The notes under the pieces: model-generated | What the model saw: the letters and a program-made list of their open reading frames with translations, nothing else | Told to the model about the DNA's origin: nothing | Databases searched by the model: none | From: Sphaerodactylus townsendi | Lineage: Eukaryota | DNA length: 64,000 nucleotides | NCBI RefSeq assembly: GCF_021028975.2 | Contig: NC_059432.1 | Location: 72,478,001 to 72,542,000, forward strand | Direction of reading: 5' to 3' | In this document: in pieces, positions 1,648-58,260 of the stretch | Layout: the number at the start of each line of letters is the position of its first letter | Position numbering within the stretch: the stretch's first letter is position 1 | Made by a program: the position numbers and the translations under genes

Positions 1648-3615
1648 TTAATATGAGCTGGACGTTCTATACCTGTTCTTTACCATTCTCAGAATCCGTT
1701 GTCTGAAAGTCAAAAAAAAGATGCCAAAGGCAACCAGCAGAGCTAAGCAAGTGGGAAAAGCCAGAACTATGTAAAGCAACACTATATCTACTGTTAGCCA
1801 CATGCAACTCTGGAGGACTGATTCTGGTAGATTTGCTGCACTGATTAACATAGAGGAGGAGTTGCAAGTGACTTGACTCATATCTGCAATGTGTACAGTG
1901 TGGCATCTGCGAAGGCCATCCCACCACTCCAGACTGCAGCAGTCAAAGGGATTTTGGCTGAGGTAGATCACACGCAAACTCTTCCCAAGCTGATTTTGTG
2001 TGATGTGTTGAGGTAGAGAGTGCAGGCAATTTCTCCTGAGATCAAGAATGCTCAGTTTCAAGCCTGTTAAAGACTCAGGGAAGCTGGCCAGAGAGTTTTC
2101 AGACAGGTCCAGGTTTTTGAGCTTCTGAAAGGCAGAAAAGTTCACATTTGTGCTTGCAGCAGACAGGCCAGTGTTCCTGAGAAACAGCACCTGCAGGGTT
2201 GGTGCCACATCTTGTAGAGGTACAAGGCCATCAAGTAGTGCACTTGGATTGTCAGAAAGATCTAACTGTACTAAGGAAGTACCCCTAAAGACATGGCTGC
2301 CCAACACTTTGAGGCTACAACTAGCTAAGTAGAGCTTCCTCAAGGAGCCAGCATTTCTGATATCAATACAGATAGGACTTGCAGCACCATCAGTGTTTCC
2401 ATGTAGGGCACAAATCTCTATTGGGTTGTGACTGAGGTCAACTGTAGTGATCTTTGCTGAATGGGTAAAAAATTCAGCTGGCAAGCCATGCAGTCTGTTG
2501 TAGCTTAAGTTAAACCATCTGAGGTTAGGTAAATTCACTCCAGGACTGAAGCTCATTTGTAGATCCAAGAGCTGATTGTAGCTGAGATCCAAATGTTCAA
2601 GAGAGCTTAATAATTCCCTCTCATTAATGTGCAATGTTTTTAAGCAGTTGTGGCTGAGGTCCAGGTGAGTGAGGGAAACCATCCCTTCAGAAAACCTCTC
2701 AGGCAGGTAGTAGAACTGATTCCAACTCATGTCCAGAAAACTCAGGAAAGAAAGAGTACCATGGCTGATCTCCTCCCAAAGGTTGACTGTGGTGACATTG
2801 GTGACGTTGCCATATAGAAACTGTATTTGCAGGGTACTCTCTGAATCATTGAAAAAATTGCCATAGAAGCTCATCCGATTGTGTGTCAGCAGCAGAGTTT
2901 GCAGTTTATTCAGCTGGGGCAACAGTGGGAAGAACAGGAGCTGGTTGTGGGAAAGATCTAGTGTTTCAATTTCAAAAGTGACATCATTCTGTGCAGCCAG
3001 GAACCATTCAATGTGGTTGTTGCTGACATTGAGCACCCGCAGTTGGGCCAGGTCAAAATCCACAATGCAAGGCATGTAGTTGTAGGCCAGATTAAGATAC
3101 TGCAGTCCTTGTAAATCTTCAAAGGCACCGGTCTCAATCTCAAAGATGTAGTTCTGCTGTATATCCAGATTCTGCAGGTGAAGCAAGTTTTTAAAGTGAG
3201 AGTCGTCCAGCCTCATAATAGCATTCCTGGCCACAGACAAGGATTCTAAGGATGACAACTGCTGGATTAGTGTGGCCATCATCTCCTCAGTGAGTTGGTT
3301 TCCTGATAGGTCCAGCTTTCTCAGGGCAGGCAAAGACCGTAGAGCAGTTGCTGTCATTGAATAGTTCATGAAGAGAGCATTGTTGGCCAGGAAGAGCAAA
3401 CTAAGACTCCTGCTGCCAAGGAAGGCCCCAGGTTCAATGAGCTCCAACCCATTCTCACACAGTCTGAGGCTCTGCAGGAGCTGATACGGTTCCAAAGAAG
3501 CATTCCTTAAAGTCTGTATACTGTTGGCATCCAGAAGAAGTTCCTCTGTTCCAGAAGGCAAGTCTACTGGGACAGAGTCCAGCCACTTTCTATTGCAATC
3601 AGCACTTCTGTTTTC
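1648..3615 (-). CDS. NRROS: NRROS/LRRC33 (negative regulator of ROS, latent TGF-beta1 anchoring LRR membrane protein), large last coding exon
   Basis: About 20 LRRs, LRRCT (NPFDCC), TM helix IVLLYIVLAFPTCLALLVAFGIFFLTF, short tail ending SSSY. Cys motifs YMPCIVDF and LSHNCL fit the LRRC32/LRRC33 family. Acceptor ttttttgctgcag|GAA at 3615, phase 0. Adjacency to FBXO45 favours NRROS over LRRC32. Confidence 0.93.
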   Translation of the reverse strand, partial: ENRSADCNRKWLDSVPVDLPSGTEELLLDANSIQTLRNASLEPYQLLQSLRLCENGLELIEPGAFLGSRSLSLLFLANNALFMNYSMTATALRSLPALRKLDLSGNQLTEEMMATLIQQLSSLESLSVARNAIMRLDDSHFKNLLHLQNLDIQQNYIFEIETGAFEDLQGLQYLNLAYNYMPCIVDFDLAQLRVLNVSNNHIEWFLAAQNDVTFEIETLDLSHNQLLFFPLLPQLNKLQTLLLTHNRMSFYGNFFNDSESTLQIQFLYGNVTNVTTVNLWEEISHGTLSFLSFLDMSWNQFYYLPERFSEGMVSLTHLDLSHNCLKTLHINERELLSSLEHLDLSYNQLLDLQMSFSPGVNLPNLRWFNLSYNRLHGLPAEFFTHSAKITTVDLSHNPIEICALHGNTDGAASPICIDIRNAGSLRKLYLASCSLKVLGSHVFRGTSLVQLDLSDNPSALLDGLVPLQDVAPTLQVLFLRNTGLSAASTNVNFSAFQKLKNLDLSENSLASFPESLTGLKLSILDLRRNCLHSLPQHITQNQLGKSLRVIYLSQNPFDCCSLEWWDGLRRCHTVHIADMSQVTCNSSSMLISAANLPESVLQSCMWLTVDIVLLYIVLAFPTCLALLVAFGIFFLTFRQRILRMVKNRYRTSSSY

Positions 3616-3835
3616 CTGCAGCAAAAAACCAAATCAATTTGTGGAACAGCAGAAGGTGGAACAGACTGCTATAGCCAGTACAAATGGTAATGGGCAGAGG
3701 GAATAAAATGCTTAAATATTGAATGTCCTAGGCTCAAATCTATACACATCTAATAAAACCACTGGGTACCCTTTGGAAAGGCATTGCTCCTCAATTGTTC
3801 CTCAGTTTATATGGTGAAAATGGGAATAATACAGC

Positions 3836-4676: not shown

Positions 4677-6505
4677 TTCAACAGCAGAACTCCTGCAAAG
4701 AGACACATAATAAGAAAAATATATGTTCACAAAGTCCATCCTTTATTTTGGGGGTGGTGGGGATATCCCAATTCTTTAGTTCACGTAGTGGACTCTGGGT
4801 TACACTAGCAGCTGCATTTTCACTTAGTGCAAAATTAAGATCCTATCATAGCTCTTCCACATCACATACATGATACAGGTTTGGTGCTTGGTGGAATATA
4901 CTCTGTTCTGCAAGTCTGCCTCTAGGGCTGAGCCTAGATACTGTTTTTGTAATCAGATTTGTTTATGAAACTGTTGAAGAGCTAAGATAAGGGAAGGGCT
5001 TGCTAACATCTGCAGTATTCCATAACTTAAAAAATATTACTGAACAGTGAAGTTTAAATAACCGCTAGATTAAAAAAATTAGAAGGTCTCTCTGGTACTG
5101 GCTAACAAAATGCCTACCCCAAGATGCCTTCCTGCTCTGCTCGAAGCCTTTCCTTTTCTTTGCCCTCATGGATCAGGTCTGTAATTTTTGTCAGTTATGT
5201 GCCTTCTCTCCTTATCTGATTCTTGAGCACCATTCCAAGAAGTGATTGGTGAATTCATTGCATCCTTCAGCACAAATACGGGCTATTGCTGATGTTAACA
5301 AGCACTACCCCTGTGTTGTCTCTCACCTGAGCATAATTCAGGGTCAGTTTGCTATTTTACAGCATCCTATATTATGTACTCCCAAGGATCATGCAGCATG
5401 GAACCAAGACATGTTCTCAGTGAATTCAAATATGCACTAAAGTAAGGTTGTCTTTCGCCGTTTACATGCTCAGACTGAAAGAGCAGCTGTTCCCTTCAGT
5501 CAACATCAGCCAATTCTCGCAATACAAAGAACAGGGCCAAATTCTGGGAATGGTACTCACTGTTTGGATCAACGTGGTCAACTGTAGGAGGCTCATTCTG
5601 TATCACCAATTGCCAACCAGTCTTGCCGTTTATCTGTCACCCTCTACCACACACACACACAAAATTGTCTGTTTGCTCTCACTTAGCACTAGATTAATTT
5701 AGCACTTGCGGAAGGAACTAACTAACGGAAACTGCAGTCACATGGATAGTAGAGTGAGTTGCAAACTGTTTCACCCCTTGAGCTCAGCAGTTGCACACAC
5801 ACATACACAAAGGTTGCGCATATGCAAGTCACTTGAAAATGAGAAGGAGCTGAGAAGAAAGGAAATGGGAGGGAGGAAATCATTCAGGGCAAATCTTTGA
5901 AGCCAGTAGTTGAATCTTACTGACTGCAGACTTGGGTGGGGGAAGGGCTGAATTAGTTTTCTTTACCATTAATATTCTTTATCATCAGTTTGGAATAAAG
6001 TTTTGGAAATACTGAATAACGACAAAATTTCATTGGGATTCCAAGAACCAAGGCACAGCAGAAACCCAACACAATATTACATGCCTGTAATGAGCACCAA
6101 CCTATATATAACTCATGGTATAATTGGAATAGGACACAAATTTTGCCTATACCTGCTAAGCCAAGACATCACCCTTCAAATATAGATATATGGAAGTGAA
6201 AAGATCCTGTCCAGTATTATGTTCATTTTATCCACATTCCTTATTCAGGTATACAGTCGAGAATGGCACAAGTGTATTTTGAAGAGTATTTTTGTGAGAA
6301 AAATATGTACATGATAGATGTGAGGCAGAAGAGCCCAACAATTTGGGCCAAAATTATTCAGCAGGCAGCCCTGGCATTGATCAGGTAGCAATAAGAAAGA
6401 CATCTAAAGGTGTGGATTGATGTAGCTAAGAAGTGAGAGACCTCAAGGTAAGAGTCAAGTGTGCAGTCAGCCGACTGAGGATGTCTGGGAGTAAGATCAG
6501 AGAGA

Positions 6506-6621
6506 GGCAGATTCCGCATAGGCCAAAAAGTGGTGTGAAAACGGTGTAATCCCTTTTTCCGCATTTTAAACCATTTTACACCGTTTTCACACTGCTGTTT
6601 TTGGCCCATGCAGAATTCGCC
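6506..6621. mobile_element. Harbinger-type MITE
   Basis: TIRs ggcagattccgcataggccaaaaa / tttttggcccatgcagaattcgcc, palindromic body, 3-bp flank aga on both sides. Confidence 0.7.
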
Positions 6622-10697: not shown

Positions 10698-11132
10698 CCA
10701 TAGTGGTGTACTAGTTTAAAGCGGCAGGCTCTAATCGGGAAACCTGGCTTGATTCCCCACTCCTACACAAGTGGCAGACTCTAATCTGATGAACTGGATT
10801 TGTTTCCCCGCATGATTTGTTTCCCCCACATGAAAACTCCTGGGTGACTTTCGACTAGTCCAGGGGTCTGCAACCTGCAGCTTTCCAGTTGTTCATGAAC
10901 TACAATTCCCATCAGCCCCTGCCAGCATGGCCAATTGGGATTTGTAGTCCATGAATATCTGGAGAGCCGCAGGTTGCAGACCCCTGGACTAGTCAGTTCT
11001 TTCAGAACTCTCTCAGTCCCACCTATCACACAAGGTGTCTTCTGTGAAGGGAGGAAGGGAAGGAGTTTGTAAGCTGCTTTGAGACTTCTTACAGGAGAGA
11101 AAGGTGGGGTATAAATCCAAACTCTTCTTCTT
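10698..11132 (+). mobile_element. tRNA/CORE-type SINE (Squam3-like), interrupted by a hAT MITE
   Basis: A/B-box-like head, CORE-like body, tail ataaatccaaactcttcttc; same family as 22712-23008. Confidence 0.75.
10861..10986. mobile_element. hAT-family MITE
   Basis: Perfect TIR caggggtctgcaacctgc / gcaggttgcagacccctg, 8-bp TSD gactagtc. Confidence 0.9.
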
Positions 11133-18520: not shown

Positions 18521-18991
18521 TAGCAAAATGGAACAAATATCCAGTGACACCTTAAAGACCAGCAGCACCATTTATTTCATAAAGAGTTTCTGAGAGTTCA
18601 CTTCACCAAAGCTGATACCGAAACAAAAGTCACTCTTTAAAGGCCCTTTCCGCATGTGCAAAATAATGCACTTTCAATGCACTTTGCAGCTGGATTTTAA
18701 TGTGCAAAACAGCAAAATCCACTTACAAACAATTGTGAAAATGGACTTAAAGTTCATAATTCTGCATGTGCGGAAGGGGCCTTTAAGGAGCCGCAGGATG
18801 TTTGTTTCATGAGTGCTAGGGCTAGCTAAGGAAGAAATGCAGGTGGTTGTTTCATGTGAATCATTCCCTTGAGACTGTTTCTAATACCAGAATTCTTCCC
18901 CAGATTTGGTGAAGTGAACTTTCAGAACTTTGTAATGAAATAAGTGACGCTGGTCTTTAAGGTGTCACTGGATATTTGTTTTATTTTGCTA
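18521..18991. mobile_element. Inverted pair of Penelope-type 3' ends in FBXO45 intron 1
   Basis: Arms 18521-18614 and 18901-18991, including a 32-bp perfect inverted match (18532-18563 / 18949-18980) with the tctttaaggtg motif. Confidence 0.65.
18641..18782. mobile_element. MITE with GGCCCTTTCCGCA-type TIR
   Basis: TIR aggccctttccgcatgtgca / tgcatgtgcggaaggggcct, flanked by ttaa on both sides. Confidence 0.8.
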
Positions 18992-20839: not shown

Positions 20840-21352
<513 letters not shown>

Positions 21353-21791
21353 TAATAATGTATTACCATTAAACACACAGCATATTGAATGTTGCCATCT
21401 TAAACAAATTCTTGAAAATATTGTGCTCCCTAAAATTTCCCAATTTTTCCACTGGCAGAAATTATCCTCAGATAATTTCACACTGTACACCTGGAATTGG
21501 TTACATACTTTGTAAGAAGGATCTCTTCTCACTCAAAAAGAGACAATGTTTCATAGCGAGTTTTTTAGTGCTATGCCTTGGCTGTTATCATATTATACAT
21601 TTTAAATGTGAAAATCCTCATTCTAAAAGAAAGGATGTTTTCACATTTTAAATATGACATCCTTCATTCTAAAATAAAATATTTCATATGAGTTTCTTTT
21701 CAGTGACTTTCCAATTTTTCTGTTGGTAAAACTGAAAAAAGTACTTGGGGGGAGAGAAACAGGTATTTTTCTTTTGGCACAAAGTATTGCT

Positions 21792-23130: not shown

Positions 23131-23727
<597 letters not shown>

Positions 23728-25140: not shown

Positions 25141-26596
25141 GGTGTTCTTCCTGTCTGGTCCATCAGTGGCTACTAACCATAGTTACTTAAGGGAGAGCTT
25201 TCATGTACAGAAGCAGCAAACCTCTGAATACCAGGCTGGGATGTATTTGCAGGAGAGGGCCTCAGCCTTTATTCTCTGTTGGTTTGACTGTCCAGAGCAA
25301 CAGGTTGGCTACTGTGTGAAACAGTATGCTGGACCAAATGGACCCGTAGTTGGATCCAGGAGACTCTGCTTGAATTCTTATGTAAAATGTGTCCACCTGA
25401 CATCAACCAGAGCTGGTTCCATTTCCACTGCAGCTCTCTCTTTCTGTGAAACAGGCTTCCTGAGGAGATGAGGGAAGTGCCATCTTTAGACATATTCAGA
25501 AGGCATTATTTCATTCTCAAAGGCTTTTAATAGGAGTATAAACAGCAAGCATGCTTTTGATGATAGGGAGAAATTATCTTGGGTTTTATCTTGTCGGTTT
25601 TAAATTGTAATGTTTTATCTAAGAAACTACCTTGAGTGATAAAGCAAAATAACGTGCATTAATATAGAATTTCTTCCAAAACAATTATACTTTTGTTGCA
25701 CCTTTTTATAATGAAAGTGAGTTTGTCTACTGAAAAGAGATTTTTCTAGAGATAGCAGACATTAGTAAGAAAGAAACAAATATTTCCAGACAATTATATA
25801 ATAATATGCTAGGCTTATGTTACAGGCAAAAAAATCCCTGCTGAAAATGTTGGAGGAACAGACAATATTAAAGTCACAACCAGAATAAAACCAACCACTT
25901 TTAATAATAGCTTTGAAATTGTGCAGTATTTCAATATAATACAGAAAATACAGTACAACCTTGTACTTGAAATACCATTTATTACAGCAAGAGCAGGCAT
26001 CATACATTTTGGTTAAAGTTCATTAAACTGATGACATGCAGACCCATTACCTGGCCCCTAGCCTATGCCCAGTCCAGAGGAAGGGGGAATCAGCTCTGGG
26101 AGCCAGCACGGGGCTGCACAAGCACATTTGTCCATCCTGGCAGGACAACCCCAGCAAGCTGGTGAGTACAGTGGAGCTCTGTGGTGCTCAACTCAGAACC
26201 AGGCTCCAGCCATAGAGCTGTGCCAGCTTAAGTTTCTGTAGGAGTTCTCTACACTCATTGCATGTATTTTTAGGACTCTTTGCCTTGACTCCCTCAGTCC
26301 ATAACCCCTTCCCCAGTGGTCTTTCCTGCTTGCCAAGGCCAAAGTTAATTATCCAACCCCCAGTGGTCAAGAAGATGCCACTTATGCTGAGTGGGGAGGG
26401 CAGCTGCAGACAGGAATGCAATGTCTGGGATGGCTACAGGTGATGACCAAGGCAATGAGCGGTGCTGCAGCGATGCAGGGCCAATCCAGCTTTGATCTAC
26501 TGTTCAACAAATGTAATTCTTGCAAATCTTTTTTCTAAGCCACTACCCAGACCCTGCTTTGAAGAACTGAGAAAGAAGCTGAATCTGATAGACTGA

Positions 26597-27043
26597 GGCC
26601 CTTTCTGCAGGGGCCATGCGAGCAGGGATGCACCAGCATAGTCTATGCCAGAGCACCCCCCAGGGCTGTTAGCATGAACGAACCCGCTGGCCCACCAGCC
26701 AGTGGCACATCCTCCGCACGGGCTGCAGTGCTCCGCTTCGAGTGGCTCCTGCCATTGCCTCCAATGTTGGGGGCCAGGAGGAGTGTCCCCTGGCCTCCAC
26801 AGAGCAACTGGAGCCGGCAGGAAGTAAAAAGGGACCAGGAGCGATGCGAAGAAAATGCCAGCTTCCACACAATGCTGTTCACTCAGCACCGGATGGAAGC
26901 TGGTGTTTTCAAAAAGACTCGCTCAATGAGTGAGTTGAGAAAATGCTGTTGTGGGGAGAAAACATCACCCTGTGTGATCTTCTCCCCACAACAGCGTTTT
27001 TACCAGCCCCATGCTGGTCTAAATGGCCCGTGTGAAATGGACC
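26597..27043. mobile_element. Harbinger-type non-autonomous element, multi-hairpin body (older copy)
   Basis: TIR ggccctttctgcaggggcca / tggcccgtgtgaaatggacc, 3-bp TSD tga, several internal stem-loops. Confidence 0.75.
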
Positions 27044-27994
27044 TGAGTCATAACACATTGAGAGGGGTTGTGGAGTGAAGAACTTTGCATGCTCTCCTGC
27101 CTCAACAACAGAGGGGGACTAACCAGTGAAATAAATACACAAAGTGGTAAAGACACTGGGTACCTTTACTGCTCTGACACTATCCCTTTGATATGTAGAT
27201 TGCTTCTCTCAGGAAACTTTCTACTTCTCCTCCACACATCATTCTTGAAAGCACCTTTCCATCATGCACAGTGTGCGCCAAGGTGCAGACACCACCTCTT
27301 GCCAACCAACTAGTAGGATTAGAGAACTACACAACTGCTACCTCTATCTCTTCACTTTCCTGGGGATGCTGACACAGTTGTGGCACATGCAGACCCATTA
27401 CCTAGTCCCCAGCCTATGCAGATTCCCTTTAGGGAATAGACCCAAAGCTCTACTGTTACACCAGCATCCAGCTGCCTCCACCTCCTGTGCTGAAAATTAA
27501 GAATCAAGATTAGCAAATTAGTGCAACAGAAAAGGCATCACAAAGTTTTAACAACTATTCTAAGCATTACAGTACTCTAAAGATTATATGAGTTGTACTG
27601 GGATTCCAGGAAAAATATTGCATAGTTCTGAGGCTACTATAGATGAAGCTCTGTTAGGTTTACCATCAGAATGAATTTAATTGAGAGTTGTTTCCTAGGA
27701 CATACTTTTTCTTTTGACTAGTCTATGTAGCAGAGTATTAAATATATGCGTAGCTTAGGTATGAACAATGCATACATTTATCAAACAGGAAAAAGTACCG
27801 GTAAATGAGCACTATTTGTGTCAACGTAAGGGGGAAATAAAAAATTATATACATTTTTAACACTGATATTGTGACTTGTGTACAAAGTCCAGTCATAAGA
27901 CTATCCAAAGGAAATAGCTATATGAATAAAGATGTGATGCATTTGGCAACATTCAAATTTTAATCCAGAGATGTTGACGGGTGTTAGTTTAGGA

Positions 27995-28052
27995 TTCCTT
28001 AGGATTAGCTGATACAACTGTGTGTTCCTTAGGATTAGCTGATACAACTGTG
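27995..28052 (+). repeat. 30-bp tandem duplication
   Basis: ttccttaggattagctgatacaactgtg twice, 30-bp period. Confidence 0.9.
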
Positions 28053-28200
28053 CATCTTTTGTTCACAATTCAACACTGGTATATTTTGCATGAAAGCAGT
28101 TTCTCTCACTTATCATTATATAAACTAGAGAAGTTGGCACTGTTGTAGTTTAGTAATGTGCCTATGGGCACATGGTGTTAAGCTATACTTGGATGTCCTA

Positions 28201-28210
28201 GCTATAAAAA
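28201..28210 (+). promoter_or_regulatory. Candidate TATA box of SMCO1
   Basis: gcTATAAAAa about 120 nt upstream of the proposed SMCO1 start codon. Confidence 0.45.
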
Positions 28211-28323
28211 GCTTTAAGTGAAAACTGACCTTCAGTACAAATTTAGTTTGCTATGTATGAGGTTGCTGTCTCCTGCAACACAGAGTCAAGTCTGTGTTAA
28301 CATACATTTCCACACCCCTCTAC

Positions 28324-28379
28324 ATGAAGATGAGCAGAGAAGCTATATCTCTGTGTGCACTGAACAAGACATTAAACAG
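28324..28379 (+). CDS. SMCO1: SMCO1 proposed exon 1 (MKMSREAISLCALNKTLNR)
   Basis: Not in the ORF track. Open frame from ATG 28324 or 28330 ending AG|gttaca in phase 2, as exon 2 requires. Length and character resemble the mammalian SMCO1 N-terminus as recalled. The donor is weak. Confidence 0.65.
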
Positions 28380-28941
28380 GTTACAAAATGGGAACAGCAG
28401 AGCTGTGTTTTTCTGGAGGATGGGTGGGTGGAGAACTAAACTATTCCTGAAATTCTGTATTTAAGATGAATGAGTGTGCCTTTACAGGTTATAAGTGACT
28501 AGAAAATATTAACTGATGACAGATTTCACGACCTTTCTGTTTTACCTTGGGATTACAATGTAAAAGCCATCCGCTGTGTAGTTGTGATTTTTACTGGTCT
28601 TTTTGGGCTGTGATGTTAAGTATAGCATGGGAATCTGGACATAAATGTTCACTGACTTGCCTTCAAGACAGTGTTTTAGGATTAAAATTGTAGCATGCAG
28701 CTTGCATGTTCCATTCTTGTAGTTCTGCAAGGTTATTTTCCTTTTGAAACCAAATACCTTGATGAAAGTGACAAGTTTGCTACAGGATCTGTACTTTAAC
28801 TTAGCTCTGATAGGATCAAATCCAGCTGTTCCAGAAGTACACATACTGATGTTTTGAATTCTACATCATAGTTGTATTCTGTTGTCCCAAAAATCTGAGG
28901 GCTGCCGTTTATGACTTGCTTTTGCTGTAAAACAAAAGAAA

Positions 28942-29410
28942 AATGGTTCTGGTGGGTTTTCCAGGCTGTGTGGCCGTGGTCTGGTGGATCTTGTTCCTAA
29001 CGTTTTGCCTGCATCTGTAGCTGGCATCTTCAGAGGTGTATCACAGAGAAAAGTCTGTTTCACGCTGTGTCTAGTGAGAAGGGAAAGTTTAGTGTAGTGT
29101 ATTGTCCATGTCCCAGGGTGGGGAACCAATCATTAAGTGTTTGGGTGGAACTTGCTATGCAAAGGTGTGGTTGAGTGCGTTGTATTGCGGGTGGGGTTAT
29201 TAGTCCATTTTTTAATTACTGGGAGCCAAGTTTTCCCTTCTCACTGACTAGATATAGTGTGAAACACTTTTCTCTGTGATATACCTCTGAAGATGCCAGC
29301 TACAGATGCAGGCGAAACGCTAGGAACAAGATCCACCAGACCACGGCCTTTCAGCCCAGAAAACCCACCAGAACCAGTTGAATCCGGCCGTGAAAGCCTT
29401 CGATAATACA
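28942..29410. mobile_element. Penelope-like element with inverted pLTR arrangement in SMCO1 intron 1
   Basis: Minus-strand copy (KTWLPVIK, resembling a GIY-YIG C-terminus, then pLTR) fused to a plus-strand pLTR; arms ~28945-29085 and ~29232-29380. Confidence 0.85.
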
Positions 29411-30008
29411 AAAGAAAAAAATGTTGAGTTCCAAAAGGCACAGAAGGTAGAATAGTGATCTTCATGGATATGTAGACAATAGTTGAAGTTGATACATATA
29501 AAAAGTAGAAAATTGAGCAAGTTTGTCTCCAGCAGTGTCATAATTAGAAAATTTTCTAAATGTACACAAGTGTATAACAGCAATTTGTTGCTAAGCAGTT
29601 ACTCCTACACGTCTGGGTGGACAAAAAGACCAATACATTAAAAAAAAATTCTGTATATCTGGGGAGTACCCTAAGTACATCAGGTCCCCTATCCTTTGTT
29701 GGTGTCTGGCCTGATTTTGTTACTTTCAGGAGCATAATGGGGATTAACTACATTTCTCTTGAAAGGAATAACATACAGACAGAAGGTAATATGGTAAACA
29801 GTGGGTCCTAAAAGCTGTGTGTATCTCTTCCATTCTTGACTTTTTAGCTCTACTAAGCAATTTTTGCCCTCTTTGCCCATCTGTGTGTGATGTGTGATCG
29901 AGTCCATGAAATCCAATTCCGCAAAAAGTCTCTTAGTCTTTAAAATGCTGCTGCGGACTTCTCTGTGGATATTAGCGCTCATCCATTATGTTGGTGGTAA
30001 AATGTATA

Positions 30009-30226
30009 GTCAAGTCACAGCTGACTTATGGTGATTCCCTAGAGTTTTCAAGGCATGAGATGTTCAGAGGTGGCTTCCCACTGCCTGCCTCCACATGAGC
30101 TGAAAGAGTTCTGAGAGAACAGTGATTGGCCCAAGGTCACCCAGCAGGTTTCAGATAGAGTTTGGAATCTAAGCCAGTTCTCCAGATGAGAGTCTGCCAC
30201 TCTTAACCACTACACCACATTGGCTC
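30009..30226 (-). mobile_element. tRNA-derived SINE with RTE/BovB-type tail
   Basis: Minus-strand head gagccaatgtggtgtagtggttaagag; tail ccataagtcagctgtgacttgac. Confidence 0.7.
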
Positions 30227-30695
30227 TTGCATTTATATTGCTTAGCCAAATAAATATTTCTTGTGAATGTCTACAAAAACATCTCACTGACTGTCTCTGC
30301 TCTACTTTGAAAAGCAATGCTACTGAGTCCCTCTTAAAATTATAGTCTTTTAAAGATCCACCAGTAAAAGGTTCCAGCAACTCCCATTGATTCAAAGGGC
30401 AAGCAGTTTATTTTCATTTCATTTATTTTCTAGTTTTGTTTTCTGAAGGGAACTAAGGAAGATTGGATGGCTTTTGCATGAACAGAAGCTAGCATAAGTA
30501 AGTACAGGAGCATGCCAAATGTTAGCTGCATTCCTACTGCTAAGATACAAAAACCAGATGTCAAAGTTATAGACTAGTGACATTAATTGAGATTAAAATT
30601 CACATGAGGATGTAAGTTGCCTACATAGGCTGAAAGACCTATAAATCAGTATATGGGCAATTCTTGATCCTGCTTTGGTTTTTAAATCTGAACAG

Positions 30696-30845
30696 GGTAG
30701 AGACTAAACTGCAGTGCATTCAGGCCCAGTTTACTATGCTAGACACTAGCATGCAGAAATTATCAGAGAGTTCTGAATTGCAAAGCACCACCCTGAAGAA
30801 TCAAATGGAGGAAAATGAAATGTGGGCATCACTGGTAGAAGACAG
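30696..30845 (+). CDS. SMCO1: SMCO1 exon 2 (coiled coil)
   Basis: aacag|G acceptor, RVETKLQCIQAQF...EMWASLVEDR, donor AG|gtaag; 150 nt, phase 2/2. Confidence 0.88.
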
Positions 30846-30948
30846 GTAAGAAATATAAATTATGGCCTGAGTTACCTATGAATTTTTTAATAATTACATG
30901 TTATATCCCAAAGTTCCCTTGCAAAAGTAGAAAGCAAGTGTTGGGTCT

Positions 30949-31449
30949 GGCCGTTTCCGCACGGCCAGGAGGCGCCCCCACGCCGGCAGGAGTTCTGTCG
31001 GCGTGGGGGCGGGAGCCTGCTCGCACGAGCGAACCGACAGGCGACTGTCGCGTAAGACGCCTCTCGCTTTCCAGCTTCACTCCACCGGTGTCCTCGCTTA
31101 TTAAGCCTGCGGAAGTCGCCAGCCCGCCCAACGGCGCCCTCGACCCCTGGAGGTGGGAGGACAGTGTGGCGAGAATACCCGGCACGCAAGCATTAAGAAG
31201 GACACCGTGAGTGCGGGCGAGCGATGGAGACAGCGTCTTCGGCCCGGTCGCGGTTCGCACCGGCGCGAAGACGCCTTCCCAACAACAACAACCCTTTAAA
31301 GGGTTGTTGTTTAGGCGGCTGGACGCCGCCTCTGAGGGAAGAAGAGGAGTCGAACCGCGCTGCTGCGTTGCAGCAGCGGCCGCCTGTCTGCCTGGGGGCT
31401 TTTTTTTGGCGCCCCCAGGCCGTCATAAATGGGCCGTGCAGAAACGGCC
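30949..31449. mobile_element. Harbinger-type non-autonomous element, CpG-rich multi-hairpin body (young copy) in SMCO1 intron 2
   Basis: 18-bp TIR ggccgtttccgcacggcc / ggccgtgcagaaacggcc (1 mismatch), 3-bp TSD tct. Confidence 0.85.
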
Positions 31450-32250
31450 TCTGTGATATCCCTAGATTTCCCACTTGAGTGCCATCTCCCTCACACTGCA
31501 TCCCCTGTGACTCCTAAGGGTCCCCTGCTTCTTAGGAGCAGCTTCTCAGGTGGCTCAGAGAGCTTCAGAAGGAAGACAGGAAAGATCCGTATTGCAAGTG
31601 TAGCTCCACTCATGGTTCTCTGGATCCCACAATTCTCTTTGCTATAATGGTATCAAAGGAAATAGCTGGAAGTTGTAATTATAACTTTGTGTTAGCAAAA
31701 ATTAAATATAATCACTATATGAACGGTTGGTACTTCTCTGCAGCACACAAATATATTGTGATCCAAAGGACTTCTAACAGAGGCTAAAACTTAGGACTTC
31801 TCCGGAGCCAACACCACATAGCCCAGAAAAATCTACAATAGCCAGCTTCTAATAGAACTTTTTAAAGAAAGGTCTTAATTTGTGATGCTGGAACAATGGG
31901 GTCAGATAGTTCAACTAAAGATTTCTGAAGAAAATGTGGACAGGAAAACAGTCCTAATTTTAGGTTCCAACTTGGGAGGACATAAACATTGACCACTTTG
32001 AGTTTTTGTTCCATCTAGGAATTAATTCAAGTCTGAAGTAATCATATTGTAGTTCCCGCCCAGTTCTAATAATTATTTTTAGATTAAATCCCACTAACTG
32101 AATGGAACTTACACCTTAGAAAAGCATATTTAGGAATGTAAAGTATTCAGAACCAAAAGTCTCCCACCCATTATTTGAATGAGAATTAATCCCAGGCTTA
32201 TTGCAATTTAATTATTTTGAAATAAATCATATTTCCATCTCTTTTTGCAG

Positions 32251-32653
32251 ATACACTTCTGTTGAGGTAAACCTTTTCTACAGTTACATCTGTGAAACTA
32301 TTCATTATGTACATTCTCAAGTACTAGAAAAGCTACCGGATCTGAAAGGAGCCCTTCCTACTCTGTCGTCTATCCTGAGGAAAAAAGGCAAAAACCAAAG
32401 CATCAGGATAGCATGGGAGTCAGTACTGGAGAGACTTGGACTGCACGAAGGAAACGTTGAAGCACTCTGTGCCTTTTTCATTTTACATAGCTATGATGCT
32501 TGCTACTACCCAGTTAAACAAAGACAGAACTACTCCACTGACATCAGTTCTGTTATAACAAAAGTAGTGAAGAACCAGCTCTTTCGACACAGTCTGCTAA
32601 GTGCTGTCCGTCTGGTGGAGGATGGGAAAGCTTGGGGAGGTTTCCAAGACTAA
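32251..32653 (+). CDS. SMCO1: SMCO1 (C3orf43) exon 3
   Basis: ctttttgcag|A acceptor; YTSVEVNLFYSY...VLEKLPDLKGALPTLSSILRKK...WESVLE matches SMCO1; syntenic position between WDR53 and RNF168. Confidence 0.9.
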
Positions 32654-34250: not shown

Positions 34251-34488
34251 GTGTAGTGTGAAGTTTTAGGGGGAAAGCATTCTTCGCGTCCTTTTTCTTA
34301 CTATTTCATCCCGGAGCAGTTAAATAAAGCCGATTACCAGCTTTGTTTATCTACTCTGGGATGAAGTAGTGGGTGAATGAGAAACAGGACACGAAGAATG
34401 CTTCCCCCCTAAAACTTCACACTACACGTAAGCCTCGAGCAAAGCAAATAAAGATCTTATTGAACTACGGCCAAATGCGGAAATAGGG
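34196..34488. mobile_element. Palindromic MITE just downstream of the RNF168 promoter
   Basis: ~95-bp inverted arms 34234-34330 / 34340-34444; right end ggccaaatgcggaaataggg. Confidence 0.8.
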
Positions 34489-48249: not shown

Positions 48250-49000
48250 ATGATATTTTTTGAGACAATTTTTGCTCTGGACCGGTGCAAGGGGCGTTGA
48301 CTGTGAGGCATGAGGTGTGGACTTAGGACAGGGAGGCAGGCACAGTTGGTGAGAGTAGTGCGGCACAGAGGATGCACTTTGGTCTGACAGGCTCTCACAT
48401 GGCATAGTGGTTAAGAATTCACCAAGGAGCCACCCCTTCCCTTCTGCCACTGGTCCAGGAGCTGTTTGAGAGTTGAAGTGGTGAATGTCTGAGCATCATG
48501 GACACTTCTGGGGAATTTTGCCATAAGGTTGGTGAATATGCGATGGTGGTCACAGAATGCCTGCATATTGATGCTATAGAGCCGGCACCAGTTCCTGTGC
48601 ACCTGGGGCTCCTTGTGAAGGGCTGTCAGGGTTATGTGGGTGCAGTCCAGCACCAGCCACATTGGGGAAGTCACAGGTGGCAGCAAATCCTTCTCGTATG
48701 GGGGCCAGCTCTCCCCACCCCTGGTTGGGAAACACACATAACTGTGAAGGTTGGCAAGCATGGTTTTGAGGAACCCATGCAGGCAGCTGCAGGCGGAGGA
48801 TTGTGAGACTTCCAGGACCTCTGCATTCGCCCCTTGGAAGGTTCCCATTGCCAAAACCCACAGGGACAGGAGGACTCTCTGGAGCACCCAGATGGTGTGC
48901 AATGCTGCCCCCTTTCCCCGGAGGTGGCGGCTGACTTGTTGCATGTCCCCTTGTGGTGGCTGTGTCTAATTGGAACCGGTCCATGCAGGTGCTGTCCAAC
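48250..49000 (-). pseudogene. Decayed PIF/Harbinger (HARBI1-like, DDE_Tnp_4) transposase in UBXN7 intron 1
   Basis: LAMGTFQ...VSQSSA (HTH-like), LDCTHI, YSINMQAFCD, FPRSVHDA and, after a frameshift, WLLG: characteristic Harbinger motifs. Confidence 0.85.
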
Positions 49001-57082: not shown

Positions 57083-58260
57083 ATTTGATTTTTGATTTGA
57101 AATTTAATTTATATACCACCCTCCCCCGGAAGGCTCAGGGCGGTGTACAACATGATAAGTAACAACAATATCAATATAATAGGACCAAGCATAATGGTAA
57201 CATCGTTTACAATAACCCCTAACATAATCCAACATCAGCTTAATAAACATTAATAATAATATTCCTATCTCAGGTTAACCACTAACAATATAATCATCAT
57301 AGTACATAATAACAATTTGCAATAGCATAACAACATAATACATAGCATACAAGTAGTAGCAAAGCATCAAATATCACACACCTTAGTACCTGCAATAAAC
57401 ACCAATCCCTGTACATAACTTGTTAACCATTACAACTAAACAACCTCATAGATTAATTAACCTGATAACAAACATAAGATTAGAAAATAAAAATATATAG
57501 ATGGCGATTTCCTCCAGCATTGTAAACCAGGACCTAACTACAACTACAGTGGTACCTTGAAAATCGCAGATAATCCGTCTGGAGATTATCGGCGATTTCC
57601 GAAAACGGCATATTTTGAGGAACGCCGTTTGCACATGCGTAATGCCGTTAGTGCACACGCAATGCCATTAGTGCATGCACAATGCCGTTTGTGTATGTGC
57701 AACGCCGTTTGCGTACCCTCGTCGGCCGCCGAAAATAGAGGCGGCCGACGATTTTCGAGTGTGGAAATCGGCGCCTAGCAATTGTCGATTGCTGAAATGG
57801 ACGATTATCGAAGGCATCAATTTTCGAGGTACTACTGTATCTACTCTTTCAGAAACCAGTTTAGTGTGTACATTTTTGACCCAATGTATAGCAACCTAAT
57901 TCTCGTTTCACCCAAGCAGGTTGACTACTAAACTGCACTAAACTAAAATTCTTCAACATCCTGCAAAAATCCAGTGAAATCCCAAAATTTACCAACAACA
58001 ATCCCCAGACATTTAATCAACTTAATTTCTTTCTCGGGGGCAGAGTTCATGGAAAACCAATGCTGTCGCCCCTTCTCCCTCCAAATTCTCTAGCAGCCAC
58101 ACATGATGGAAAGGGCAGGGTTTTCAGAGAGGGCAAAAAGATCCAAATCCCTTTTGCCAACATCTTTTCCAGCACCTCCGTAGGCCTTGGGTTTAGTGGC
58201 AAAAAGCCTTGTGGCATTTCCTTGCTTTCTTTGAAGTATCTTTGAAGTTGAAATAAGGCC
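57083..58260 (-). mobile_element. LINE 3' region (L2-like) with low-complexity UTR, interrupted by a MITE
   Basis: Minus-strand end gtacaccgccctgagccttccggggg...taaat(tcaaa)n, typical of L2-type tails. The distal boundary is uncertain. Confidence 0.5.
57547..57837. mobile_element. Tc1/mariner (Tigger/pogo-like) MITE with internal 20-bp tandem array
   Basis: TIR cagtggtaccttgaaaat / attttcgaggtactactg, TA TSD on both sides. Confidence 0.85.

What the first reader, a model, noticed from the sequence alone, without database searches (positions are those of the whole stretch)
26597..27043. Second element with a similar hairpin order but different sequence: apparent structure conservation
Seen: this copy (TSD tga) aligns poorly with 30949-31449 at sequence level yet follows the same layout. 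It runs TIR, first long stem (gggatgc..gcatag/ctatgc..gcacccc), short hairpin gttagcatgaac (vs gctcgcacgagc) followed by gaacc in both elements, small hairpin gctgg/ccagc, a central domain, stem gaaaatgccagcttcc/ggaagctggtgttttc with a gttc..gcaccgg segment as in the other element, palindrome actcgctca-a-tgagtgagt, long stem aaaatgctgttgtggggagaa/ttctccccacaacagcgtttt, final hairpin accagc/gctggt, then taaatgg plus the TIR. Inference: replaced stem sequences with retained pairing are the signature of selection on secondary structure. This may be an undescribed structured non-autonomous transposon class in squamates. It is my best candidate for a novel system here, but it rests on two copies compared by eye.
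Basis: partly seen in the sequence, partly recalled or inferred. Interest (0 to 1): 0.78.

Follow-up and report, generated by a model that had tools for sequence, protein, structure and literature searches.

The report
Two hairpin-rich Harbinger MITEs in gecko
These are two distantly related, multi-copy miniature Harbinger-type jumping genes in a gecko that share their ends and a similar series of internal DNA palindromes. That is suggestive but unproven evidence that the palindromes are kept for a reason, and it is not a new class of element.

Summary
26597-27043 (E1, TSD TGA) and 30949-31449 (E2, TSD TCT) are TIR-bounded, non-coding, multi-copy elements. Both fold far better than shuffles (z -7.1 and -9.1).

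They share the terminal repeat (GGCCNTTTCYGCA...), TAAATGG at the right end, and a position-matched block about 66-95 nt from the left end. Their interiors have no significant plain sequence similarity.

The order and size of the hairpin modules match better than module-permuted controls (p about 0.001-0.01, but only when 60-nt hairpins are allowed to form). Several stems change sequence but stay paired. One (H4) falls in register by three alignment methods, H1 and H7 by two, and the small h2 hairpin by hand comparison.

The support is thin:
- There are only two sequences.
- Covariance models make each element the other's best hit, but only 1-8 bits above unrelated foldback MITEs, and one hit is out of register.
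- Both strands fold equally well, so this is DNA-level palindromy, not a strand-specific RNA.

The elements are PIF/Harbinger (Tourist-like) MITEs, a known kind, not a new class. Selection for mobilisation and template-switch repair of palindromes cannot be told apart here. First readers noted the same pattern at three other places in this genome; none was followed up.

The parts
26594..26596 (.). E1 target-site duplication TGA (second copy at 27044-27046)
   Evidence: read directly
26597..26615 (+). E1 left terminal inverted repeat (GGCCCTTTCTGCAGGGGCC)
   Evidence: (I2)
26625..26659 (.). E1 hairpin H1. 17-nt arms and a 1-nt centre. It fills the same 49-nt interval between the TIR and the conserved block as E2 H1, but with unrelated sequence
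   Evidence: (I4)
26662..26691 (+). E1 conserved subterminal block (weak h2 hairpin plus CGAACC). 20/30 identical to E2 31013-31042 at the same distance from the left end. Candidate transposase or Myb-like binding site
26684..26705 (.). E1 small hairpin h3
26747..26822 (.). E1 central 76-nt domain with an inner 11-nt-arm hairpin (26768-26799)
   Evidence: (I12)
26851..26910 (.). E1 hairpin H4. 60 nt, apical GTTC..GCACCGG. Aligns in register with E2 H4 by MAFFT, by the transition-tolerant alignment and by CM R3
   Evidence: (I1)
26917..26935 (.). E1 palindrome H5 (9-nt arms, 1-nt centre, one G.T from CpG decay)
26940..27000 (.). E1 hairpin H6 (21-nt arms, 95% complementary, with an inner 5-bp hairpin)
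   Evidence: (I3)
27002..27018 (.). E1 hairpin H7 (6-bp stem). In the ungapped alignment anchored at the right end it matches a weaker hairpin in E2, with 2 double changes to Watson-Crick pairs
   Evidence: hairpin; ungapped right-end alignment, pairs read by hand; RNAalifold on MAFFT
27020..27043 (+). E1 TAAATGG motif plus right TIR
30946..30948 (.). E2 target-site duplication TCT (second copy at 31450-31452)
   Evidence: read directly
30949..30966 (+). E2 left TIR (18 nt, 94% complementary to 31432-31449)
   Evidence: I3
30973..31011 (.). E2 hairpin H1 (17-nt arms, 94% complementary)
   Evidence: (I4)
31013..31042 (+). E2 conserved subterminal block (GCTCG-CA-CGAGC hairpin plus CGAACC)
31225..31281 (.). 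E2 hairpin H4 (57 nt, apical GGTTCGCACCGG)
   Evidence: (I9)
31284..31311 (.). E2 perfect 28-bp palindrome H5 with no spacer
   Evidence: I10
31313..31385 (.). E2 73-nt domain holding the hairpins GGCGGC..GCCGCC and GCGCTGCTGC..GCAGCAGCG
31390..31420 (.). E2 hairpin H7 (10-bp GC stem, T-rich loop)
   Evidence: (I12)
31426..31449 (+). E2 TAAATGG motif plus right TIR

Best explanation
E1 and E2 are single copies of two diverged, multi-copy families of non-autonomous PIF/Harbinger-type (Tourist-like) MITEs in a sphaerodactylid-like gecko.

Shown:
- 3-bp TSDs and a shared TIR of about 18-19 bp.
- A shared right-end TAAATGG and a shared subterminal block 66-95 nt from the left end.
- No coding capacity.
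- Hundreds (E1 family) to thousands (E2 family ends) of copies.
- E1 is old: it is CpG-depleted and present at the same site in a related species. E2 is young: its CpG content is intact.

The interiors are chains of local inverted repeats that fold equally well on either strand. They are therefore a DNA-level feature, not a strand-specific RNA.

At least four repeats (H1, h2, H4, H7) lie at corresponding positions in the two families, with changes that keep the arms complementary. The young copy has near-perfect arms. The old copy shows ordinary, uncorrected CpG decay in its arms, so arm complementarity belongs to the actively transposing lineage.

Inferred: the shared termini and subterminal block are the sites recognised by a Harbinger transposase and its Myb-like partner. 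The inverted repeats are cis-acting DNA features (hairpin or cruciform extrusion, or symmetric sites) that favour mobilisation or amplification. On this view, copies with broken arms stop founding new copies.
For: Identity:
- TSDs and TIRs.
- Two further MITEs with the same TIR, one with the classic TTA duplication.
- No Pfam domain in any ORF of the elements.
- Summed contig depth is about 200x single copy over E1, and about 1,300-3,400x over the E2 ends against about 300x over its centre (rough).
- A DDE_Tnp_4 transposase fragment lies in the window. Earlier notes report young autonomous Harbingers in this genome (not tested here).

Age:
- CpG o/e is 0.39 in E1 and 1.04 in E2.
- A contig of the related organism B spans the E1 junction (record 17).

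Hairpins are real: z = -7.1 and -9.1.

Layout:
- Module-permutation p is 0.001-0.01.
- The hairpin cassette between conserved flanks has an equal 49-nt length with near-random identity.
- H4 is in register by three methods.
- A structure-blind alignment gives 17-18 double pair-keeping changes, against 3-7 when partners are slid.
- A CM with structure finds the other element (21.6 and 17.3 bits). A sequence-only model finds nothing.

DNA level:
- The + and - strands fold equally.
- CpG-type stem defects number 7 on + and 5 on -.

Uncorrected decay in the old copy argues that in-place self-repair of arms is slow.

The stems of one element differ from each other, so one sequence-specific protein cannot explain all of them.

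From the literature: the Myb-like protein of Harbinger3_DR binds a 9-bp subterminal motif (PMC9710019, citing Sinzelle 2008).
Against: - Only two sequences, chosen by eye after the fact.
- Interior homology is marginal once local composition is preserved: p 0.04-0.18 against 40-nt block shuffles.
- The layout test loses significance at pairing span 50.
- CM scores are only 1-8 bits above unrelated foldback MITEs: 16.4, 15.5 and 14.6 bits, and 13.3 bits. The E2-derived model aligns E1 one module out of register.
- No hairpin requirement is known for PIF/Harbinger transposition (my knowledge).
- The autonomous partner and its ends were not seen.
Confidence: 0.45

Rival explanations
1. Mutational maintenance without selection. 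The inverted repeats were created, lengthened and repeatedly re-perfected by DNA-polymerase template switching between arms, or by intra-strand repair during gap repair after excision. The two families inherited the positions of the repeats from a common ancestor while their sequences drifted. 'Compensatory' changes are then one-step copying events.
For: - Strand-symmetric folding.
- Palindromes whose symmetry runs into a centre of 0-2 nt that no hairpin loop could use: E2 H5, E1 H5, E1 H1 and E2 h2.
- Pair flips such as CG<->GC.
- Template switching is documented to create and maintain hairpins, and to homogenise and expand inverted-repeat arms (PMC8794818, PMC10710096, PMC13100816).
- Unrelated MITEs in the window are also foldback-rich.
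Against: - The old copy E1 carries about 12 uncorrected CpG-type arm defects, so in-place correction is slow on the time scale over which the families diverged.
- Five of 16 hairpins with a centre shorter than 3 nt is not clearly more than chance. This is my count, with no formal test.
Confidence: 0.25
2. Chance resemblance. The two families share only the transposase-recognised ends and one subterminal block. Their interiors are unrelated hairpin-rich filler, and any two chains of 9-11 hairpins can be matched by eye.
For: - No significant plain interior similarity.
- Marginal significance under a composition-preserving null.
- The layout test is not significant at span 50.
- CM margins over unrelated MITEs are small, and one hit is out of register.
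- The depth profile suggests E2 is modular, with ends and centre at different copy numbers.
- TIR-like motifs occur inside both elements.
Against: - Module-permutation p is 0.001-0.01 with a flat mirror control.
- The H1 cassette has identical length between conserved flanks.
- H4 is in register by three independent methods, with a shared GCACCGG loop and a CTTC/GAAG core.
- Each element is the other's best CM hit in the window.
Confidence: 0.2
3. Selected RNA structure. The elements are transcribed and the hairpins act in RNA, for example as small-RNA precursors or as a structured non-coding RNA carried by the transposon.
For: - The H4 and H6 hairpins (57-73 nt, 22-27 bp) are of pre-miRNA size. 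They give sub-threshold generic hits to miRNA and FinP models.
- MITE-derived miRNA genes are known (my knowledge).
Against: - No strand asymmetry in folding energy or in G.T pairs.
- No Rfam family reaches its gathering score.
- No listed run holding the stretch is on record as RNA. This is weak evidence, because many species have no RNA run.
- A perfect palindrome with no loop (E2 H5) is a DNA signature.
Confidence: 0.1

Closest known systems
Tourist-like MITEs of the PIF/Harbinger superfamily (e.g. rice mPing; Harbinger-N families of vertebrates)
   Same: 3-bp target-site duplication, short TIRs beginning GG, 100-500 bp, non-coding, high copy number, several families sharing one TIR, and potential for stable DNA secondary structure.
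   Different: The duplications here are TGA and TCT rather than the usual TWA. The interior is a chain of 9-11 separate local hairpins rather than one end-to-end foldback. Two families appear to keep the order of the hairpins while the stem sequences differ.
Harbinger3_DR (zebrafish), with a transposase and a Myb-like protein that binds subterminal motifs
   Same: It is a model for how the shared TIR and the conserved subterminal block would be used. The Myb-like protein binds a 9-bp subterminal motif and recruits the transposase (PMC9710019).
   Different: No hairpin requirement is described for it, and it targets a 15-bp palindromic site (PMC3016246). Binding to the gecko block is untested.
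Template-switch-generated and template-switch-maintained hairpins (Monttinen and Loytynoja 2022, PMC8794818)
   Same: Perfect arms, one-step 'compensatory' changes, and strand-symmetric DNA-level origin.
   Different: Described for RNA genes and promoters, not for MITE families. The uncorrected decay in E1 argues that the process is slow here.
Hairpin-dependent single-strand transposons (IS200/IS605 family, Helitrons)
   Same: Subterminal hairpins act as cis-acting signals.
   Different: Those elements lack TIRs and target-site duplications. E1 and E2 have both.

Membership tests
PIF/Harbinger-derived (Tourist-like) MITE | 3-bp target-site duplication | tested here: met
   TGA/TGA for E1 and TCT/TCT for E2. 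AGA and TTA for the two other MITEs with the same TIR.
PIF/Harbinger-derived (Tourist-like) MITE | Preference for TWA (TAA/TTA) targets | tested here: inconclusive
   Only 1 of 4 elements (18641-18783, TTA) fits. Animal Harbingers can use other triplets, for example CWG in Harbinger3_DR (PMC3016246).
PIF/Harbinger-derived (Tourist-like) MITE | Short terminal inverted repeats | tested here: met
   E2: 18 nt, 94% complementary. E1: 27-nt arms including the TSD, 74% complementary. The TIR core occurs 13 times in the window against 1.3 expected.
PIF/Harbinger-derived (Tourist-like) MITE | Small, non-coding and multi-copy | tested here: met
   447 and 501 bp. No Pfam hit in 6 ORFs and no protein relatives for one ORF. 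Summed contig depth is about 200x to 3,400x single copy (rough).
PIF/Harbinger-derived (Tourist-like) MITE | TIR and subterminal match to an autonomous element encoding a DDE_Tnp_4 transposase plus a Myb-like protein | not testable with these tools
The DDE_Tnp_4 fragment at 48414-48944 has no such TIR nearby. Autonomous elements are reported elsewhere in the genome (not tested here).
Curated structured RNA family (Rfam) | A match at or above a family's gathering score | tested here: not met
   Best hits are FinP at 27.1 bits against a threshold of 45, and mir-3064 at 21.7 against 76.
Structured RNA under selection (general) | Strand-specific folding or a G.U bias on the sense strand | tested here: not met
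   RNA MFE for + and - strands: -202.3 and -206.0 (E1), -249.4 and -253.5 (E2). G.T pairs: 10 vs 9 and 5 vs 3.
Structured RNA under selection (general) | Statistically supported covariation across many sequences | not testable with these tools
   Only two sequences are available. No other copies are in the window, and none could be fetched.
IS200/IS605- or Helitron-like hairpin-dependent transposon | No TIRs and no target-site duplication | tested here: not met
   Both TIRs and TSDs are present.

The most novel reading that the evidence does not exclude
A lineage of gecko Harbinger MITEs needs a conserved series of DNA hairpins or cruciforms, not just TIRs and binding motifs, to be mobilised or amplified. 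Families therefore swap stem sequences through pairing-preserving changes. This would be the first structure-dependent cis requirement in a eukaryotic cut-and-paste transposon.
Probability: 0.25. Interest if true: 0.75.

Novelty: new member of a known kind. Interest (0 to 1): 0.4.

Why it matters
How MITEs out-amplify their autonomous parents is an old open question. If arm complementarity is really selected in the active lineage, these gecko families would point to a DNA-structure requirement for Harbinger mobilisation, testable with stem-breaking and stem-restoring mutants.

If complementarity is instead kept by template switching, the families would be a natural, high-copy system for measuring that mutational process.

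If neither holds, this is ordinary repeat annotation: two Harbinger MITE families, one old and one young, next to SMCO1.

Tried and rejected
- Other copies in the window: none beyond E1 and E2 (blastn; strict TIR plus TSD scan).
- Fetching other copies: the translated-ORF trick found nothing.
- Read laying gave depth and a few variant positions but no linked copy sequences.
- The interiors of the two short MITEs at 6506-6621 and 18641-18783 show no similarity to E1 or E2.
- Shared 10-mers between the E1 centre and the E2 left end looked like a rearranged homology, but they are no more than chance.
- A plus-strand bias of CpG>TpG wobbles in E1 stems (7:0) vanished once the minus strand was folded (7 vs 5).
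- Hairpins as nested insertions of tiny foldback elements: rejected, because no flanking duplications are seen (read).
- Palindromes as sites for one dimeric protein: rejected for most stems, because the stems differ from each other.
- Sinzelle 2008 could not be read. It is cited through PMC9710019.

Full report
**What is there**

E1 (26597-27043, 447 nt) is flanked by TGA/TGA. E2 (30949-31449, 501 nt) is flanked by TCT/TCT.
- Both begin GGCCNTTTCYGCA and end with its reverse complement. The E2 TIR is 18 nt and 94% complementary. The E1 arms are 27 nt and 74% complementary, TSD included.
- The TIR core occurs 13 times in the window against 1.3 expected.
- It also bounds two short MITEs, at 6506-6621 and at 18641-18783. 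The second has a classic TTA duplication.
- No ORF of E1 or E2 has a Pfam domain.
- Neither element has another copy in the window.

**Copy number and age**

Logan contigs of four runs were laid on 26450-31600.
- Single-copy bins sum to about 22-35.
- E1 bins sum to about 5,500-5,800.
- E2 bins sum to about 39,000, 8,400 and 88,000 for the left, centre and right.
- The tool warns that these sums are not copy numbers. As a rough guide, both are multi-copy families, and the E2 ends are far commoner than its centre.
- A contig of a related organism (X5, record 17) spans the left junction of E1, so that insertion is shared between the two organisms.
- Another X5 contig stops at 30945, 3 nt before E2, with 108 unaligned letters beyond. 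This suggests, but does not show, an empty site.
- CpG o/e is 0.39 in E1, 1.04 in E2 and 0.28 in the window. GC is 0.57, 0.655 and 0.41. E1 is therefore old and E2 is young.
- The neighbouring ORF at 32201-32653 is SMCO1, 93% identical to Sphaerodactylus townsendi. The host is therefore a sphaerodactylid-like gecko.

**Are the hairpins real?**

Yes. As single-stranded DNA, E1 folds at -111.6 kcal/mol (shuffles -74.6, z -7.1). E2 folds at -158.7 kcal/mol (shuffles -110.7, z -9.1). The E1 version of the short hairpin 'gttagcatgaac' is weak.

With pairing span 80, the local domains run as follows:
- E1: TIR | 62 | 22 | 16 | 13 | 76 | 60 | 19 | 61 | 17 | TIR
- E2: TIR | 39 | 28 | 11 | 10 | 75 | 24 | 12 | 57 | 28 | 73 | 31 | TIR

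**Sequence relationship**
- Plain local alignment of the interiors is at the shuffle mean (p 0.47). Only the right end is significant (p 0.02).
- Shared 7-9-mers are not enriched in the interiors.
- A position-matched block is conserved. E1 66-95 against E2 65-94 is 20/30 identical, as good as the TIR at 14/19.
- The last 50 nt are 31/50 identical without gaps.
- A transition-tolerant alignment of the interiors beats whole-sequence shuffles (z about 3) and the reverse-complement control. Against 40-nt block shuffles, which keep local composition, the local score gives z 2.1 (p 0.04) and the global scores give p 0.07-0.18.
- Interior homology is therefore likely but marginal.

**Layout**

I aligned base-pair-probability profiles and permuted the hairpin modules and spacers of one element.
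- The observed score is reached by 0.1-1% of permutations at span 80.
- It is reached by at most 0.25% at span 120, with DNA or RNA parameters.
- The mirror image scores at the null mean.
- At span 50, which forbids the 60-nt hairpins, the test is not significant (p 0.13-0.26).
- The interval between the TIR and the conserved block is 49 nt in both elements. It holds a 17-nt-arm hairpin in both, with only 10-20 of 49 identical at any offset.

**Pairing-preserving changes**
- In the structure-blind alignment, 25 pairs of the two independently predicted structures fall on the same columns: 8 in H1, 14 in H4 and 3 elsewhere (one in the TIR, two in a short central helix).
- Double changes that keep a pair number 17-18, against 3-7 when partners are slid by 1-3 columns.
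- H4 has 5-6 such pairs, among them CG to GC and GC to TA, which CpG decay cannot produce.
- H4 is placed in the same register by MAFFT with RNAalifold, by my alignment and by the covariance model built from E1.
- In the ungapped alignment anchored at the right end, H7 has two AT to GC pairs, one double change to a wobble pair and one broken pair. I read these pairs by hand from the two sequences printed.
- Comparing h2 by hand (sequences) gives one double change (CG to TA), one wobble and one broken pair.
- Caveat: any two hairpins aligned in register give 'compensatory' pairs. The weight rests on the anchors, which are the conserved flanks and loops.

**Covariance models**
- The model from E2 277-437 with structure scores E1 at 21.6 bits (E about 0.002). 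That is the best hit outside E2, but it is shifted by one module. An unrelated Tc1/mariner-like MITE at 57.5 kb scores 13.3 bits.
- The same model without structure does not find E1 at all.
- The model from E1 255-404 scores E2 at 17.3 bits, in the expected register. Unrelated foldback MITEs score 16.4, 15.5, 14.6 and 13.9 bits.
- Structure, not sequence, links the two elements, but the margin over generic foldbacks is small.

**DNA or RNA?**
- Both strands fold equally: DNA -103.7 and -103.7 for E1, -145.2 and -141.9 for E2. RNA parameters give -202.3 and -206.0, and -249.4 and -253.5. G.T pairs number 10 vs 9 and 5 vs 3.
- Seven of the 15 imperfect stem positions in E1 are CpG to TpG changes on the plus strand, and five on the minus strand. 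This is neutral, symmetric decay after insertion, left uncorrected.
- No Rfam family reaches its threshold.
- The repeats are DNA-level palindromes that were near perfect when the copy inserted.

**Interpretation**

The elements are PIF/Harbinger-type MITEs, not a new class.
- The shared termini and the block are most simply the sites for the transposase and its Myb-like partner. The Myb-like protein of Harbinger3_DR binds a 9-bp subterminal motif (PMC9710019).
- Hairpins persist in near-perfect form in the young family, with different stem sequences in the two families. That needs either selection among copies for mobilisation, or arm-to-arm template switching (PMC8794818, PMC13100816).
- The uncorrected decay in E1 leans towards selection. 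The strand symmetry and the zero-spacer palindromes fit both.
- With two sequences, the matter cannot be settled.

**Earlier notes and limits**
- First readers recorded the same pattern at three other places in this genome, and recorded E2 itself. None was followed up.
- Follow-ups elsewhere report young autonomous Harbingers. I could not test them.

Noticed in passing
window 48414-48944 (-): A 177-aa ORF with a borderline DDE_Tnp_4 (Harbinger transposase) match: 25.0 bits against a cut-off of 24.8. Neighbouring ORFs have no domain, and no GGCC..TTTC TIR lies nearby. It is probably a decayed copy or an exon of a spliced or domesticated transposase.
   Followed up: partly
window 6506-6621 and 18641-18783: Two short MITEs (116 and 143 bp) with the same TIR core as E1 and E2. 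The first is one long hairpin between the TIRs, with an AGA duplication in a GA repeat. The second has a TTA duplication. Their interiors are unrelated to E1 and E2.
   Followed up: partly
window ~57548-57838: A Tc1/mariner-like MITE with CAGTGGTACCT.. TIRs and TA flanks. It holds an internal tandem array of a roughly 21-bp unit and a GC hairpin. It served as an unrelated control and scored 13-15 bits with the covariance models.
   Followed up: partly
window 34262-34420 and 10853-10994: Two long-TIR foldback MITEs. They score nearly as high as E2 with the E1-derived covariance model.
   Followed up: no
window 30949-31449 relative to 32201-32653: E2 meets CpG-island criteria (501 bp, GC 0.655, CpG o/e 1.04). 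It lies about 750 bp upstream of the main coding exon of SMCO1, so a young MITE may supply a CpG-rich block to that gene's 5' region or intron.
   Followed up: no
window 31108-31120 (-) and 26713-26721 (+): TIR-like motifs occur inside both elements: GGCGACTTCCGCA on the minus strand of E2 and TCCGCACGG in E1. With the left TIR, the E2 motif would bound a 172-bp sub-element. This fits the uneven depth of the E2 ends and centre, and suggests a modular or composite origin.
   Followed up: no
window 28858-29545 and 30062-30233: Very high-copy repeats, with summed contig depth of 0.6-2.5 million against about 25 for single copy. The second has SINE-like loose-end consensus sequences. 27138-27309 is also repeated, at about 4,600.
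   Followed up: no
window 26724-26757: In the related organism B, the orthologous E1 copy has a cluster of nine differences within 34 nt, in the small-hairpin region of the E1 centre. This could be a local rearrangement, a template switch or a chimeric contig.
   Followed up: no
window 1648-3624 (-), 20846-21355 (+), 23131-23727 (+): Host genes: a 658-aa leucine-rich-repeat ORF and two WD40-repeat exons.
   Followed up: no
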